This document shows, piece after piece, positions 34,087-59,590 of a stretch of DNA of 64,000 bases (the stretch's first letter is position 1; each line of letters begins with the position of its first letter). Source of the DNA: Octopus sinensis (taxonomy: Eukaryota); the NCBI RefSeq assembly GCF_006345805.1, contig NC_042999.1, positions 149,110,001-149,174,000 of the forward strand, given 5' to 3'. The notes below the pieces were generated by a model, which made no database searches, was not told where the DNA came from, and saw nothing but the letters and a program-made list of their open reading frames with translations. A program made the position numbers and the translations under genes.

Positions 34087-34242
34087 ATGGACCTACTATG
34101 TAGCAAGTTATTGAGACTTGGTATTCTGCAAACATTTCTCAGCCTCAGTTGTACTGTTATGGCCAGCGTTTGTCTAGACTACCTAAAAAACCAACATGTA
34201 CTTGCTGCACTTGCTGGAGGTGCCCTCTTTTGCTCTTTTTGT
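34087..34242 (+). CDS. Coding exon 1 of a four-transmembrane (CD20/MS4A-like) protein: MDLLCSKLLRLGILQTFLSLSCTVMASVCLDYLKNQHVLAALAGGALFCSFC
   Basis: First ATG after an in-frame genomic stop (TAA 34012-34014). 156 nt = 52 codons ending TGT|gtaagt, a perfect phase-0 donor. Encodes TM1 (LLRLGILQTFLSLSCTVMASVCL, LGxxQ motif as in MS4A TM1) and the start of TM2. Confidence 0.75.
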
Positions 34243-34359
34243 GTAAGTATTGAGAAATTCATTTTATGAACATTTTAAACAAAAGTGATTTTATTCTACC
34301 AAATAAACGACCTAACTTTTGCTTTTATAACTCTATTTTTATTATTACTTATGCCAGCG

Positions 34360-34711
34360 CTGCCCCAACTGGCTTCTGTGCCGGTGGCACTTAAAAAGCA
34401 CCATCTGAATGTGGCCGTTGCCAGCGCCGCCTTGGCTGGCTTCTGTGCCGGTGGCATGTTAAAAGCTCCAACCGATCGTGGCCGATGCCGGACCCCCCTG
34501 GCACCTGTGCAGGTGGCACGTAAAAAGCACCCACTACACTCGCGGAGTGGTTGGCCTTAGGAAGGGCATCCAGCTGTAGAAACTCTGCCAGATCAGACTG
34601 GAGCCTGGTGCAGCCCCTGGCTTCCCAGACCCCGGTTGAACCGTCCAACCCGTGCTAGCGCGGAAAACGGACGTTAAACGATGATGATGATGATGATGAT
34701 GATGATGATGA
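34360..34711 (+). mobile_element. RTE 3'UTR copy with (GAT)n tail; other short copies at 17375-17575(+), 18790-18990(+), 23240-23430(-), 27000-27330(+), 29055-29280(+), 32350-32620(-), 40560-41282(+, tandem), 48210-48385(-), 52020-52290(-) and 63800-64000(-)
   Basis: Conserved ggaagggcatccagctgtagaaactctgccagatcag...ccaacccatgctagcatggaa..gacgttaaacgatgatg. Confidence 0.9.
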
Positions 34712-34857
34712 TTTTGAGTTCAAATTCAGCTGAGCTTGACTTTGTTTTTCACCCTTTCGATATCAATGAAATGAATTCCAGTTATTTACTTGGCTCAGTA
34801 TAATTGACTTAACCTCTCGCCCCAAGATTTCTGGCCTCATGCCTACAGTACAAAGGA

Positions 34858-35032
34858 TTCTTCTTCTTCTTCTTCTCTTCTTCTTCTTCTTCTTCTTCTT
34901 CTTCTTCTTCTCCTCCTCTTCTTCTTCTTCTCTTCTTCTTCTCTCCTCCTCCTCCTCCTCCTCCTCCTCCTCCTCCTCCTCCTCCTTCTTCTTCTTCTTC
35001 TTCTTCTTCTTCTTCTTCTTCTTCTTCTTCTT
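34858..35032. repeat. (TTC)n/(CCT)n polypyrimidine microsatellite
   Basis: Visible. Confidence 0.95.
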
Positions 35033-36285
35033 AAGGCAATGAACTGGCATAATCATTAGCATGCTGGACGAAATGCTTAGCGCTATTTCACCTGTCGCTA
35101 CTTTCTGAGTTCAAATTCCACCAACATCGACTTTACCTTTCATCCTTTCGGGGTTAATAGAGTAAGTACCAGCTGAACACTGGGGACGATGTAATCAACT
35201 CATCCCCACTTCCTCCAAGCTACCCTTGTGGCAAAAATTTGAAATAATAATAATTACTATTACTGAGAGGTGTGTAAGACACATACAGGGACGCTGTCAG
35301 TAAGATGAGGGTTGGCAATGATTACAATGAGAACCCAGGGCTGGGTTCAAAATTCTACCAGGACACCTAATGAAGGTTGGGGAGTAAATCAGCCAAAATA
35401 TTGTGGTAGTAACAGACAAGATGAGGACACATCTATCCAACGTAAATGATGTAAATAATGTAAGAATGGTATTCATCCACAGAAAATTTGTCTCAACGAA
35501 TTCTGTCTGACCCATGCAAGCTTGGAAATGTGGATGTTAAAATAGTGATGATGAAGAAGATGATGATGATGATGATGATGATGGCTAACAATTATGTCCC
35601 TCCAATGATTTCTAATATTGACCTTAAACCATAAATTTGCTGCACTTTTTAGGGTTGCAGTGCAGAGTGATAATAATTCTCTCTAATTTTGGCTTGAGGC
35701 CAGCAATTTTTAGAAGAAGGGGTCAAGTTGATATTAATAATCAATATATCTACAATCAACACCAGTACACAAGCACTTTATTGGCTTTGAAGGTATGAAG
35801 GGGAAAGTTGGCCTCAGGAAGATTTGATCTCAGAATGTAAAGAAATGTTAAGCATTTTGTTTGGCATACTAATGATTCTGCCAGCTCACTGCCTGAGTGG
35901 AAGGAGATAATAATAATAATAACAATGATGATGATGATGATGATGATGGATGATGATGATGGTGATAGTGATGGTGATGGTGATGATGATGATGATGACG
36001 ATGATGATGATGATGATGATGATGTTTCTCTAAAAGAAATGGAGTAACTTTCAAATTACAAAGATCTGGAAATAGAGGTAACTCAAATGTAGAGCCTAAA
36101 AATAGAAACAATTCTTATCACAGTAGGTATGATAAAAAATATTCAGACAAATACATAACAAAAACACCAGAACAAACAAGTATATATAATATTTAGGAAA
36201 TAGCACTACTAGGCGCCACACATCCTATGTAAAACACTTTCAATACAGTAAAAATAAGAGCATCACAGCAAACCACAGCACATAC

Positions 36286-36345
36286 CTAAGGCACACAGAT
36301 CTGTGCTCAGTAGTGCAAAGAAAGCATGTGATAAAAATAAAACTA
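36286..36345 (-). CDS. Candidate signal-peptide exon (V)VLFLSHAFFALLSTDLCAL(G), possibly of the VWC gene
   Basis: Acceptor (att)n-tcag|, perfect donor TAG|gtatgt. 60 nt, phase 1-1, hydrophobic core ending in small residues. Linkage to the VWC exons is not demonstrated. Confidence 0.5.
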
Positions 36346-36779
36346 CTGAATAATAATAATAATAATAATAATAATAATAATAATAATAATAATAATAATA
36401 ATAAAATAATAGCCAAAAAGAATGAATAGCATGGTACCATTGGCTGCAGGTAATAAGCCCACTGCACATGCAAGACTCCAGGAGCTCCAACAAAACCTGT
36501 GATGAAGAGAAATTAATAACAATAATAATAATTATTATTATTATTTCCACTCTAGGCATAAGGCCTTGAAAACTTTTTGCGGGTAGGGGGCTAGTTGAAT
36601 ATATCGACCCCAGTGTGTAACTGGTACTTATTTCATTGACCCCGAAAGGATGAAAGGCAAAGTTGACCTGGGCGGAATTTGAACTCAGAATGCAGCAGTA
36701 GACAAAATACTGCTAAGCATTTCGCCTGGTGTGCTAACAATTCTGCCAAATAATAATAATGATGATGATAAATGATTAT

Positions 36780-57300: not shown

Positions 57301-58047
57301 AACAAGTAATAATCCAAGGATCTTAATCGACTTAGTTCTTATTTTTCCTTAAGTTTGGTCCCTGTTCAATCAGTTTCTTTTTCTGAACCACTAAATTACA
57401 AGGATGTAAATAAACCAACACTAGTTGTCAAGTGGTGATGGAAACAAACATGAAAACACAGCATGGCCACAGTCTAATGCCTTATAATGATTTTGCTCAT
57501 TTGAATGTTACTTAATCTATCCATAATGCTTTCACGTGATTATTTGAAGAGAAAGGCGAAGAGAGAGAGAGAGAGAGAGTGAGAGAGAGAAAGAGAGAGA
57601 AAAGTAGGAGAAAGAAAAGCAGGAAAGACAAAAAGATGGCGAGAGAAAAAGAGGTAGAAAAAAGTGTCCATGATGTGAGGTAGAGGGAACGTAATTGTAT
57701 CACTTTCACGTGATTAGTTAAAAGAAAAGAGAGAACAAGAGGGAGAAAGAAAAAGGAGAGAGAAAAAGAGGAAAAGGCAAAAAATTAGACAGAAAGAGGG
57801 AGAAAGAAAAAGCGAGAGAGAGAAAAAGAGGAGAGAGAAGTGTCAATAAATTAAGTACCAGTTGCATACTAGGGTTGATCTAATTGACTGGCCCCTCCCC
57901 CAAAATTTCGGGCCTTGTGTCTGGAGTAGAAAAGAATATTGTTTTTCCTTTTTTTATTTTTCTTATTGCATATCTATAATTTCTAGTTAATGTGTTGACA
58001 CTACAACAGTTCTCCTGAATAGTTTCTTTTTTTAATTAATTTTGCAG

Positions 58048-58170
58048 CCAGTTCTAGCTCTTGCAGTCATCAGTCCTGTTGCAGGATTATTAGCTTTTAT
58101 GGTCTTCGGCATCACAATGTGTACTGCAGCTATACTTCACTACCATGAATCACCAGCCTGTTTACAAGTG
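58048..58170 (+). CDS. Coding exon 5 of the four-TM protein: PVLALAVISPVAGLLAFMVFGITMCTAAILHYHESPACLQV (TM4)
   Basis: Acceptor tttttttaattaattttgcag|, donor GTG|gtgagt. 123 nt, phase 0-0, open, hydrophobic. Confidence 0.88.
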
Positions 58171-58405
58171 GTGAGTTATTACTGTTTCACCTTTATTGCA
58201 GTTATTATTTAACTTTTTATAAAGCTTCTTATATTTGGTATTGAGTCAATGAGGGGGCCTCTATACAGTAACTTCAGTACCATAGCCAGGTTCTAAAGTC
58301 AGTGGGAGTGAGCACATAAAAAAAGACACTGTGACACATACCAAGCATTTTAAACTCATTTTGCCTATATTATTTGAAATATTTCAATAGTTACAATATA
58401 CATAG

Positions 58406-58710
58406 TGGAGGCGCAATGGCCCAGTGGTTGGGGCAGTGGACTCGCGGTTGGAGGATCATGGTTTCGATTCCCAGACCAGGCGTTGTGTGTGTTTATTGAG
58501 TGAAAACACCTAAAGCTCCACAAGGCTCTGGCAGGGGGTGGTGGCAACCCCTGTTGTACTCTTTCGCCCCAACTTTCTCTCACTCCTTCTTGTTTCTTGA
58601 GTAACGCTGTGAAGGACTGCTGTCCCGTCCAACTGGGGGGAACACATACGCCATAGAAACCGGGCCCAGGAGCTTGGCTAGGCTTGAAAAGGGTGCATAA
58701 ATAAATAAAT
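58406..58710 (+). mobile_element. SINE type E
   Basis: A and B boxes, V-like motif, (AAAT)n tail. Confidence 0.85.
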
Positions 58711-58906
58711 AATATACATAATTGTATTCTACATTTGTTAATTTGATGTTTCAATGTCATTATGTATGAAACTTACAACTACTGATATTGGTGTGACATG
58801 AAAAAGATGAAGCACCACAGAATTGGCCAGCATCAAGAGGTTATGATGTCAGGGTTTGCTTTGGTTGTTCAGATGCCAGTGGCCACCAACATGTCACCGG
58901 AGATTG

Positions 58907-58971
58907 AACATGGGAAGTTGGTCAAATAAAACATGGGAAGTTGGTCAAATAACATGGAAGTTGGTCAAATA
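58907..58971. repeat. Three-copy ~21-bp tandem repeat aacat(g)ggaagttggtcaaata
   Basis: Visible. Confidence 0.85.
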
Positions 58972-59419
58972 AAGAAAGTATTAGAATCAAAGAATCTAGT
59001 GAGGTTTAAGATTAACAAATAGTAAATACAAACAGCTCAGAACTGAATAAATTAGTTTGCAGAGAGGAATAGAAGAGGCCCTAGTTGTAGGAAGGGCCCT
59101 TATATTTGATAAAGGATCCTGCCTGAAATGACCATTCCAATTTATTATGGCATTTTCAGAATTAAATATCTTACAGTTAGTTCTGCCTGGTATGATCTTA
59201 CCTTTGTGTCTTCTGAGCTTAGTAAAATATGTATTAACAATATGCTAAATTTGATTAAATTAATAATAAATCTTCTCTAAAAATGCAATATTGTTTTCAT
59301 TCAAAAATCAATATTTAAAAAAAATTTTTTAAATAAAATATAAATATTTGTAGATCATTCTCTCTTTATTTTAACATCCTTAAATATTTTTGACATGAAT
59401 TTTTTTCTTCTTTTCCCAG

Positions 59420-59590
59420 CATGCCATATCTTATAACCCAGAAGCATGTGAGCAGCCACTGATCGTCTGTACATCAGATATTGAAGATTCACAAGATTAT
59501 TTGCCATCTGACATTGCTTTTGATCAATCATTTGCAAGAAGACCCACAGATTTTGATGTTCCTTTACGAAAGTATCATAAGATAAGATAG
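59420..59590 (+). CDS. Probable last coding exon of the four-TM protein: HAISYNPEACEQPLIVCTSDIEDSQDYLPSDIAFDQSFARRPTDFDVPLRKYHKIR* (acidic cytoplasmic tail)
   Basis: Strong acceptor ttttttcttcttttcccag|. Phase-0 frame open for 56 codons to TAG 59588-59590, followed by repeat-poor sequence to about 60.8 kb with AATAAA near 60603. An alternative phase-2 donor at 59572 makes the exact C-terminus uncertain. Confidence 0.72.
   Translation, partial: HAISYNPEACEQPLIVCTSDIEDSQDYLPSDIAFDQSFARRPTDFDVPLRKYHKIR

What the first reader, a model, noticed from the sequence alone, without database searches (positions are those of the whole stretch)
34087..59590. Six-exon gene for a CD20/MS4A-like four-TM protein, largely invisible to the ORF track
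Seen in sequence: six exons with canonical splice sites join in frame to a 217-aa protein (52+22+29+17+41+56 aa). It has four hydrophobic helices (about 8-29, 38-61, 77-98 and 121-150), a short N-terminus, an LGILQ motif in TM1 and an acidic C-tail (DIEDSQDYLPSD). Established knowledge: this is the topology of the CD20/MS4A superfamily (MS4A, TMEM176, TMEM196, sarcospan-like), and mouse MS4As act as chemosensors in necklace olfactory neurons. Inference: this may be a poorly annotated cephalopod MS4A-like protein, and a sensory or channel-regulating role is a testable guess.
Basis: partly seen in the sequence, partly recalled or inferred. Interest (0 to 1): 0.7.

Follow-up and report, generated by a model that had tools for sequence, protein, structure and literature searches.

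The report
Cephalopod-only four-helix membrane protein gene
The six-exon gene is real and conserved between octopuses and cuttlefish, and it encodes a small four-helix membrane protein, but it is already annotated as an uncharacterized protein and no test run here links it to the CD20/MS4A family.

Summary
Six exons with GT..AG borders (all five donors GTRAGT, all introns phase 0) join into a 654-nt ORF. Its 217-aa product is 100% identical to RefSeq 'uncharacterized protein LOC115209826 [Octopus sinensis]'. Orthologues exist in Argonauta hians (86% identity), Octopus vulgaris, and Sepia esculenta (64%, as a spliced ~1.1 kb mRNA). A further decapod contributes a last-exon fragment. dN/dS between octopus and Sepia is about 0.06. 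Four hydrophobic helices, the LGILQ motif and the acidic tail are all present.

The CD20/MS4A family call is not supported.
- Pfam gives no CD20 hit for any orthologue, and PDB sequences give no hit.
- Profile searches of 1.84 and 5.8 billion proteins find only cephalopod proteins.
- hhalign against a CD20 + FcεRIβ profile gives probability 0.5%, no better than shuffled controls. The positive control (CD20 vs FcεRIβ) gives 96.7%.
- AlphaFold models are too poor (pLDDT 40-43) for a fold test.

The best reading is a coleoid-restricted orphan tetraspan membrane protein with two conserved membrane-embedded glutamates. Its function is untested. Interest is modest.

The parts
34039..34086 (+). In-frame leader that is a relic of the decapod N-terminal extension. 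It reads V-I-P-S-D-K-G-P-L-Q-L-G-P-R-A-R. The position of the Sepia start codon is GTG here, and an in-frame TAA lies at 34012-34014.
   Evidence: sequence compared with P0004 (MIPSDKKALQQRSPTKT...).
34087..34242 (+). Exon 1 (52 aa): the start ATG, TM1 with the LGILQ motif, a short loop, and most of TM2 (AALAGGALFCSFC). Donor is TGT|GTAAGT.
   Evidence: Sepia transcripts P0005 and P0007 read through a donor at the same position.
38503..38568 (+). Exon 2 (22 aa): the end of TM2 with conserved Glu60, then loop 2 (GGTHWFFRNINT).
39519..39605 (+). Exon 3 (29 aa): TM3 with conserved Glu85 and the PGAIGFFG motif. This exon is missing from the O. vulgaris model P0003.
47057..47107 (+). Exon 4 (17 aa): loop 3 (INVIRRYSPEASLNIDF). 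It lies in frame inside a 132-aa mechanical ORF at 46718-47116.
   Evidence: It aligns without gaps to the Sepia mRNA product.
58048..58170 (+). Exon 5 (41 aa): TM4 and the conserved juxtamembrane stretch HYHESPACLQV.
59420..59590 (+). Exon 6 (56 aa plus TAG): the acidic, probably disordered C-tail with the conserved H-x-I-S-Y-N-P, Q-P-L-I-V and E-D-x-x-[DE]-Y-[LI]-x-x-D-I-x-F stretches.
   Evidence: The same phase-0 acceptor before His162 is present in decapod genomic contig L008.

Best explanation
This is the already annotated Octopus sinensis gene LOC115209826. It is a six-exon, roughly 25.5-kb gene under strong purifying selection. It encodes a 217-aa integral membrane protein with four transmembrane helices, very short loops and a roughly 65-aa acidic cytosolic tail.

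The family is detectable only in coleoid cephalopods (octopods and decapods) and has no demonstrable sequence relationship to CD20/MS4A or any other described family. It is therefore best treated as a lineage-restricted ('orphan') tetraspan protein.

The mechanism is inferred and untested. The most constrained parts are TM2 and the TM4-to-juxtamembrane stretch. Two glutamates are invariant inside TM2 and TM3 (Glu60, Glu85). Small-residue packing motifs (GG, PGAIGFFG, SPVAG) and many conserved cysteines are present. These features suggest a protein that works by helix-helix association within the membrane, either as a homo-oligomer or as an accessory or adaptor subunit of another membrane protein. 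The buried carboxylates would pair with a partner's basic residue or a cation. The conserved acidic Tyr-containing tail would serve as a cytosolic docking or sorting segment.

I put the gene-and-orphan-family part at about 0.8 and the adaptor/oligomer mechanism at about 0.3.
For: Gene model:
- The splice sites are canonical and strong, and the ORF is intact.
- The product is 100% identical to the RefSeq protein.
- The six exons are found alone in the window by tblastn.

Expression and conservation:
- Sepia esculenta juvenile RNA-seq contigs carry the intron-less orthologous CDS in 54 blocks of the collection.
- The positions of introns 1 and 5 are conserved in decapods.
- Between octopus and Sepia, dN is 0.20 while pS is 0.74 (saturated), so dN/dS is about 0.06. 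TM2 is the most constrained region (dN 0.077, 84% identity).

Topology:
- There are four Kyte-Doolittle peaks.
- AlphaFold DSSP assigns helices at 2-32, 37-61, 72-110 and 120-152.
- The Sepia N-terminus carries 7 K/R, which favours an N-in orientation.

Conserved residues: E60 and E85 are invariant, as are C5, C22, C29, C49, C52, C82, C101, C145, C158 and C178.

Restricted distribution:
- Only cephalopod proteins appear in the 1.84-billion-representative HMMER search and in the 5.8-billion search at E<=10.
- There is no Pfam or PDB sequence hit.
Against: - No O. sinensis transcript was examined. The collection holds the exact protein only on the genome record, so the octopus junctions rest on the RefSeq model and on homology.
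- 'Restricted to cephalopods' means undetectable by HMMER. Short TM proteins diverge fast, so remote relatives scoring below about 25-38 bits would have been missed.
- No profile-profile scan of all families (HHpred-type) was possible.
- Membrane orientation is ambiguous in the octopus protein: 3 K/R in the N-terminus (to R10) plus 2 in loop 2, against 1 in loop 1 and 3 in or next to loop 3.
- The mechanism rests only on conservation patterns. There is no structural model (pLDDT 40-43) and no expression, localisation or partner data.
Confidence: 0.8

Rival explanations
1. One reading: the protein is an extremely diverged protostome member of the CD20/MS4A-like superfamily (MS4A, TMEM176, sarcospan-like). 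It would work like them, as an oligomeric tetraspan that regulates receptors or channels or acts as a chemosensor.
For: - It has the same gross layout: four TM helices, a very short first loop, a longer TM3-TM4 loop, and a probably cytosolic N-terminus and acidic C-tail.
- TM1 'R-L-G-I-L-Q' resembles MS4A 'K/F-L-G-A/V-x-Q-I', and this is the only stretch hhalign aligns.
- A Glu at the end of TM2 and a polar-Ser pair (E85-S86 against N-S in CD20) at the start of TM3 line up by eye. This is my own inspection, not a statistical result.
- My shallow profiles could not link sarcospan to MS4A either (probability 1.9%), so a negative result at superfamily depth is weak.
Against: - There is no PF04103 hit for any of the four orthologues at E<=10.
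- There is no PDB CD20 or FcεRIβ hit.
- No MS4A, TMEM176, sarcospan or TMEM196 protein appears among hits in 1.84 or 5.8 billion proteins.
- hhalign probabilities are 0.3-0.8%, at or below the shuffled and reversed controls, while the within-family positive control gives 96.7%.
- The invariant MS4A TM2 motif YPxWG..SGxL is absent.
- MS4A and TMEM176 are reported as confined to jawed vertebrates. Invertebrate look-alikes share only short TM stretches that are also seen in unrelated proteins (PMC2826416).
Confidence: 0.1
2. It is a fast-evolving member of some other described four-TM family that lies beyond HMMER's reach, so it is not truly cephalopod-specific.
For: Small polytopic membrane proteins have low-information sequences and are often missed by sequence-profile searches. 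Only about 3 effective sequences were available to build the query profile (Neff 1.28).
Against: - 64% identity is retained across the octopod-decapod split with dN/dS of about 0.06. That is slow evolution and should leave recognisable relatives in other molluscs, but none were found even at E<=10.
- No Pfam family scored apart from single-member chance hits: FtsX 0.0085, DUF6057 0.091.
Confidence: 0.2
3. It is not a functional protein-coding gene, but a spurious or decaying gene prediction.
For: No octopus transcript contig carrying the exact full ORF is in the collection. The O. vulgaris annotation lacks exon 3.
Against: - The ORF is intact in four species.
- dN/dS is about 0.06.
- A spliced mRNA is present in many Sepia esculenta RNA-seq runs.
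- Intron positions are conserved.
- All ten splice sites are strong.
Confidence: 0.02

Closest known systems
MS4A / CD20-like family (Pfam PF04103; CD20 = MS4A1, FcεRIβ = MS4A2)
   Same: Both are small proteins with four TM helices, a very short TM1-TM2 loop, probably cytosolic termini and an acidic Tyr-containing C-tail. TM1 has an L-G-x-x-Q motif and TM2 ends in a Glu.
   Different: - There is no HMM or profile-profile similarity above chance.
- It lacks the invariant YPxWG...SGxL motif of TM2.
- The TM3-TM4 loop is only about 20 aa and has no Cys pair.
- MS4A is reported only from jawed vertebrates (PMC2826416), whereas this family is seen only in coleoid cephalopods.
Sarcospan (SSPN), the tetraspan of the dystrophin-glycoprotein complex
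   Same: Four TM helices, small size, and a role (in SSPN) as an accessory subunit held in a complex by TM contacts. That is the kind of mechanism proposed here.
   Different: hhalign probability is 0.5% over 21 columns. Sarcospan has a large Cys-rich TM3-TM4 loop that is absent here. This protein has a long acidic tail that sarcospan lacks.
Taxonomically restricted ('novel') cephalopod genes, a general category known from the octopus genome papers (cited from my own knowledge, not tested here)
   Same: It is conserved within coleoids, has no detectable homologue elsewhere and has no Pfam domain.
   Different: This is a category, not a family, so it says nothing about mechanism.

Membership tests
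MS4A / CD20-like (PF04103) | Significant match to the Pfam CD20 HMM | tested here: not met
   hmmscan found no PF04103 hit at E<=10 for the octopus protein or any of its three orthologues.
MS4A / CD20-like (PF04103) | Profile-profile similarity to bona fide members (CD20, FcεRIβ) | tested here: not met
   hhalign probabilities were 0.3-0.8%. The score of 17.5 compares with shuffled controls of 15.9±2.4 (11/40 at or above the observed score) and a reversed control of 25.1. The positive control, CD20 against FcεRIβ, gave 96.7% (E 3.8e-10). Caveat: the family profile was built from mammalian sequences only.
MS4A / CD20-like (PF04103) | Conserved TM motifs: TM1 LGxxQI, and TM2 Y-P-x-W-G ... S-G-x-L (invariant in alignment A2) | tested here: not met
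   TM1 LGILQ is present. TM2 reads HVLAALAGGALFCSFCLTVCGIIE, with no Y-P-x-W-G and no S-G-x-L (one search compared with the invariant columns).
MS4A / CD20-like (PF04103) | Four transmembrane helices in a protein of about 200-300 aa | tested here: met
   Kyte-Doolittle peaks fall at about 8-30, 38-62, 76-100 and 121-150. DSSP helices in both AlphaFold models agree.
MS4A / CD20-like (PF04103) | N- and C-termini both cytosolic | tested here: inconclusive
   The K/R count favours N-in for Sepia (7 K/R in the N-terminus) but is balanced in octopus. No dedicated topology predictor was available and there are no experimental data.
MS4A / CD20-like (PF04103) | CD20-type fold (compare PDB 6VJA, 8YWA) | tested here: inconclusive
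   The AlphaFold2 models have pLDDT 40.5 and 43.0 and pTM 0.23 and 0.26. Foldseek against PDB gave nothing below E=2.5 and no CD20 or FcεRIβ hit, but the model is too poor for this to count.
MS4A / CD20-like (PF04103) | Taxonomic range (jawed vertebrates, per Zuccolo et al. 2010) | tested here: not met
   The host is an octopus. PMC2826416 concluded that invertebrates lack MS4A and TMEM176 genes.
Sarcospan | Sequence or profile similarity to sarcospan, and a large Cys-rich TM3-TM4 loop | tested here: not met
   hhalign probability is 0.5%. The TM3-TM4 loop is about 20 aa with a single Cys. The test has low power because the sarcospan profile held only 2 sequences.
TMEM176 / TMEM196 | Detectable sequence similarity to family members | tested here: not met
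   These families were tested only indirectly. The profile search of 1.84 billion representatives (E<=0.001) and the search of 5.8 billion proteins (E<=10) returned no non-cephalopod protein. No direct profile-profile test was run.

The most novel reading that the evidence does not exclude
The protein founds a tetraspan membrane-protein family that arose, or diverged beyond recognition, in the coleoid cephalopod lineage. It would then be a lineage-specific membrane component, for example an accessory subunit of a cephalopod-specific receptor or channel complex. An alternative, less likely reading is a true protostome MS4A relative, which would overturn the vertebrate-only view of that family.
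Probability: 0.45. Interest if true: 0.4.

Novelty: already known. Interest (0 to 1): 0.25.

Why it matters
The gene model adds nothing new, because RefSeq already holds exactly this CDS as an uncharacterized protein. What the check does add is as follows.
- The MS4A label should not be propagated. The resemblance is one of topology plus a five-residue TM motif, and it sits at chance level in profile comparisons.
- The protein is a well-conserved (dN/dS about 0.06), coleoid-restricted tetraspan with two invariant membrane-embedded glutamates. Such lineage-restricted membrane proteins are candidates for cephalopod-specific cell biology.

Cephalopod genomes contain many genes of this sort, and nothing here yet points to a particular tissue or process. 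The finding is therefore of modest interest until expression or partner data exist.

Tried and rejected
- Pfam hmmscan of the protein and of all four orthologues at E<=10 gave only single-member chance hits: FtsX 0.0085, DUF6057, PhrC_PhrF, HEV_ORF1.
- A PDB sequence search with the family profile at E<=10 found nothing.
- An exhaustive HMMER search of 1.84 billion representatives found only the query itself and two decapod fragments.
- A word-indexed profile search of 5.8 billion proteins at E<=10 found five cephalopod proteins only.
- AlphaFold2 on the full-length alignment gave pLDDT 40.5, and on the trimmed TM core (1-168) it gave 43.0. Both models are unusable.
- Foldseek against PDB with the poor model returned complex-I ND6, V-ATPase c-ring and GABA-A TM-domain matches at E>=2.5. 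These are meaningless.
- hhalign against CD20, FcεRIβ and sarcospan was at chance level.
- A literature search for LOC115209826 found no papers.
- I looked for nested genes or transposon ORFs in the introns. No ORF of 85 aa or more had a Pfam hit among those scanned.
- No Rfam family or tRNA was found in the window.
- I inspected the tail by eye for canonical sorting or signalling motifs (YxxΦ, [DE]xxxL[LI], NPxY, ITAM). None fits canonically, so I make no motif claim.

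
Full report

Yes. The six segments at 34087-34242, 38503-38568, 39519-39605, 47057-47107, 58048-58170 and 59420-59590 (+) are each bounded by AG and GT. All five donors read GTAAGT or GTGAGT, and the acceptors follow pyrimidine tracts. Every exon is a multiple of three, so all introns are phase 0.

Two controls address chance. In the 25 kb between exons 1 and 6 there are 684 stop-free AG...GT phase-0 segments of 45-200 nt, but only 3 have at least 16/20 pyrimidines upstream and a GTRAGT donor. 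tblastn of the product recovers exactly the six exons and nothing else in the window.

**2. It is already annotated.**

The product is 100% identical over its whole length to NCBI 'uncharacterized protein LOC115209826 [Octopus sinensis]'. The gene lies at CM016861.1:149134087-149179590 of GCA_006345805.1, so the window is 149100001-149164000 of that chromosome. A full-text search for the LOC identifier found no paper.

**3. Orthologues, expression and constraint.**

Searches found Argonauta hians (217 aa, 86% identity), Octopus vulgaris (188 aa) and a 227-aa protein, P0004, at 64% identity.

- P0004 is encoded without introns on ~1.0-1.2 kb Logan RNA contigs in 54 blocks of the collection.
- Two of those runs (SRR19578104, SRR20545814) are Sepia esculenta juvenile RNA-seq, PRJNA844162. 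A spliced mRNA of the orthologue is therefore expressed.
- Its product aligns without gaps across all five octopus junctions.
- Two further Sepia transcripts (P0005, P0007) read through into intron sequence directly after ...FCSFC, which is the octopus exon-1 donor position.
- A decapod genomic contig (L008) has the acceptor ...ttatacag|CAC ACC ATT immediately before the His that begins octopus exon 6.
- Nei-Gojobori counts between the octopus and Sepia CDS give dN 0.20 and pS 0.74 (saturated), so dN/dS is about 0.06. TM2 is the most constrained region (dN 0.077, 84% identity).

This is a functional protein-coding gene. One caveat applies: no octopus transcript carrying the exact ORF is in the collection, so the octopus junctions rest on the RefSeq model plus homology.

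**4. Anatomy of the protein.**

- Kyte-Doolittle profiles show four hydrophobic segments at about 8-30, 38-62, 76-100 and 121-150.
- Both AlphaFold models place helices at 2-32, 37-61/62, 72/74-110 and 120-152/153, although their confidence is very low.
- The loops are short, at about 7, 14 and 20 aa. The tail is about 65 aa, acidic and predicted to lack regular secondary structure.
- Invariant features across octopods and Sepia:
  - L-G-x-x-Q-T in TM1.
  - HVLAAL-x-GGALFCSFCLTV-x-GIIE in TM2, with Glu60.
  - ES-x-x-FVPGAIGFFGR in TM3, with Glu85.
  - IRR in loop 3, and SPVA...LAF..FG...CTAAIL in TM4.
  - PACLQVH-x-ISYNP next to the membrane, then QPLIV and E-D-x-x-[DE]-Y-[LI]-x-x-D-I-x-F in the tail.
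  - Ten invariant cysteines.
- Orientation: the Sepia N-terminus carries 7 K/R, which favours N-in and C-in. In octopus the K/R counts on the two sides are balanced, so orientation is only a leaning.

**5. Family assignment.**

Every test of the CD20/MS4A call that could be run was negative or uninformative.

- Pfam: there is no PF04103 hit at E<=10 for any of the four orthologues, only unrelated single-member chance hits.
- PDB sequences, which include CD20, FcεRIβ and sarcospan: no hit at E<=10 with the family profile.
- A profile HMMER search of 1.84 billion cluster representatives returned three hits at E<=0.001, namely the query and two decapod fragments.
- A word-indexed profile search of 5.8 billion proteins at E<=10 returned five cephalopod proteins.
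- For a profile-profile test I built a family alignment from 15 CD20 orthologues and three FcεRIβ sequences read from PDB entries.
  - hhalign of the cephalopod profile against it gave probability 0.47%, P=0.13, with 31 columns covering TM1 only.
  - In the control runs, CD20-only against FcεRIβ-only gave 96.7% (E 3.8e-10, 117 columns).
  - The cephalopod profile gave 0.3% against CD20 and 0.8% against FcεRIβ.
  - Forty column-shuffled versions of the cephalopod alignment scored 15.9±2.4, and 11 of the 40 reached or exceeded the observed 17.5. The reversed alignment scored 25.1.
  - The similarity is therefore at chance level.
- The TM2 signature that is invariant in my MS4A alignment (Y-P-x-W-G...S-G-x-L) is absent.
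- Sarcospan gave probability 0.5%.
- Structure: AlphaFold2 gave pLDDT 40.5 (full length) and 43.0 (TM core). Foldseek against PDB gave nothing below E=2.5 and no MS4A protein. This test is inconclusive, not negative.
- Literature: Zuccolo et al. 2010 concluded that MS4A and TMEM176 are confined to jawed vertebrates. They found that invertebrate look-alikes share only short TM similarities that also occur in unrelated membrane proteins (PMC2826416). The LG..Q match here fits that description.

These tests have limited power. With such shallow profiles, sarcospan could not be linked to MS4A either (1.9%). A very remote superfamily relationship is therefore not excluded, only unsupported.

**6. 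What it most likely is and does.**

Shown here: the gene encodes a conserved four-helix membrane protein that is detectable only in coleoid cephalopods.

Inferred from the conservation pattern: constraint is concentrated in the TM helices, especially TM2. Two carboxylates are invariant within TM2 and TM3, and small-residue motifs and many cysteines are present. This is what one expects of a protein whose function depends on helix-helix contacts in the membrane. It could be a homo-oligomer or an accessory or adaptor subunit, with the buried glutamates pairing with a partner's basic residue or a cation. The conserved acidic Tyr-bearing tail would act as a cytosolic docking or sorting segment.

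This would be 'MS4A-like' in working principle without being a family member. I give the mechanism about 0.3. No canonical sorting or signalling motif fits the tail, and there are no expression-site, localisation or partner data.

**7. Novelty and score.**

The gene model is already in RefSeq and UniRef. The family is unnamed, absent from Pfam and unstudied. Lineage-restricted genes are common in cephalopod genomes (my own knowledge), so the specialist surprise is low. The useful outcome is mostly corrective: the gene is confirmed and the family label is rejected. Interest is 0.25.

**8. Surroundings.**

- Upstream on the minus strand (25605-26143) lie two exon-like ORFs with von Willebrand factor type C domains, called as a 141-aa gene in the record.
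- The introns hold microsatellites and short tandem repeats but no long ORF with a Pfam match.
- No Rfam family or tRNA is present in the window.

Noticed in passing
window 34012-34089: The start codon has shifted. The 48 nt before the octopus ATG are in frame and encode V-I-P-S-D-K-G-P-L-Q-L-G-P-R-A-R, which is homologous to the Sepia N-terminus M-I-P-S-D-K-K-A-L-Q-Q-R-S-P-T-K. The Sepia start position is GTG in octopus (34039-34041), and an in-frame TAA lies at 34012-34014. All three octopod proteins start at the downstream Met, where Sepia has Thr. Either the extension was lost to the 5' leader in octopods, or a near-cognate GTG start makes a longer isoform.
   Followed up: partly
window 39519-39605 (exon 3) compared with P0003: The O. 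vulgaris protein model (188 aa) lacks exactly exon 3, which is 29 aa and encodes TM3. All exons are phase 0 and symmetric, so skipping any internal exon keeps the frame. This could be an annotation gap or a real three-TM isoform.
   Followed up: no
P0005 / P0007 (Sepia esculenta Logan transcripts): These are intron-1-retaining transcripts that read past the ...FCSFC donor into VSIFCGTGDG... . P0007 also carries 37 extra N-terminal residues from upstream sequence.
   Followed up: partly
window 25605-26143 (-): The neighbouring gene fragment has two von Willebrand factor type C domain ORFs (Pfam VWC E 9e-6 and 1e-4, each just under the gathering score). The genome record calls it as a 141-aa product with VWC and VWC2L_2nd hits.
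   Followed up: partly
window 46718-47116 (+): A 132-aa mechanical ORF contains exon 4 in frame and stays open for 339 nt upstream of the acceptor, across a (TACA)n repeat at 46879-46961. The Sepia mRNA shows no extra residues there, so the open stretch looks like chance.
   Followed up: yes
window 2489-2975 and 22767-23045: There are tandem copies of 185-bp and 63/127-bp units (93% and 82% matches) that look like SINE-type interspersed repeat fragments. ARAGORN found no tRNA.
   Followed up: no
P0004 loop 1 and window exons 1, 2, 5 and 6: Histidines cluster at the membrane boundaries. Loop 1 reads DHLRHHH in Sepia and DYLKNQH in octopus. GGTHW follows TM2 and HYHE follows TM4. H37 and H162 are invariant. 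Together with E60, E85 and many Cys, this could indicate metal binding, but that is pure speculation.
   Followed up: no
window 34858-35032, 35925-36024, 40395-40542, 54302-54487: The introns contain long microsatellites: (TTC)~60, (ATG)33, (TA)~75 and (AT)93.
   Followed up: no
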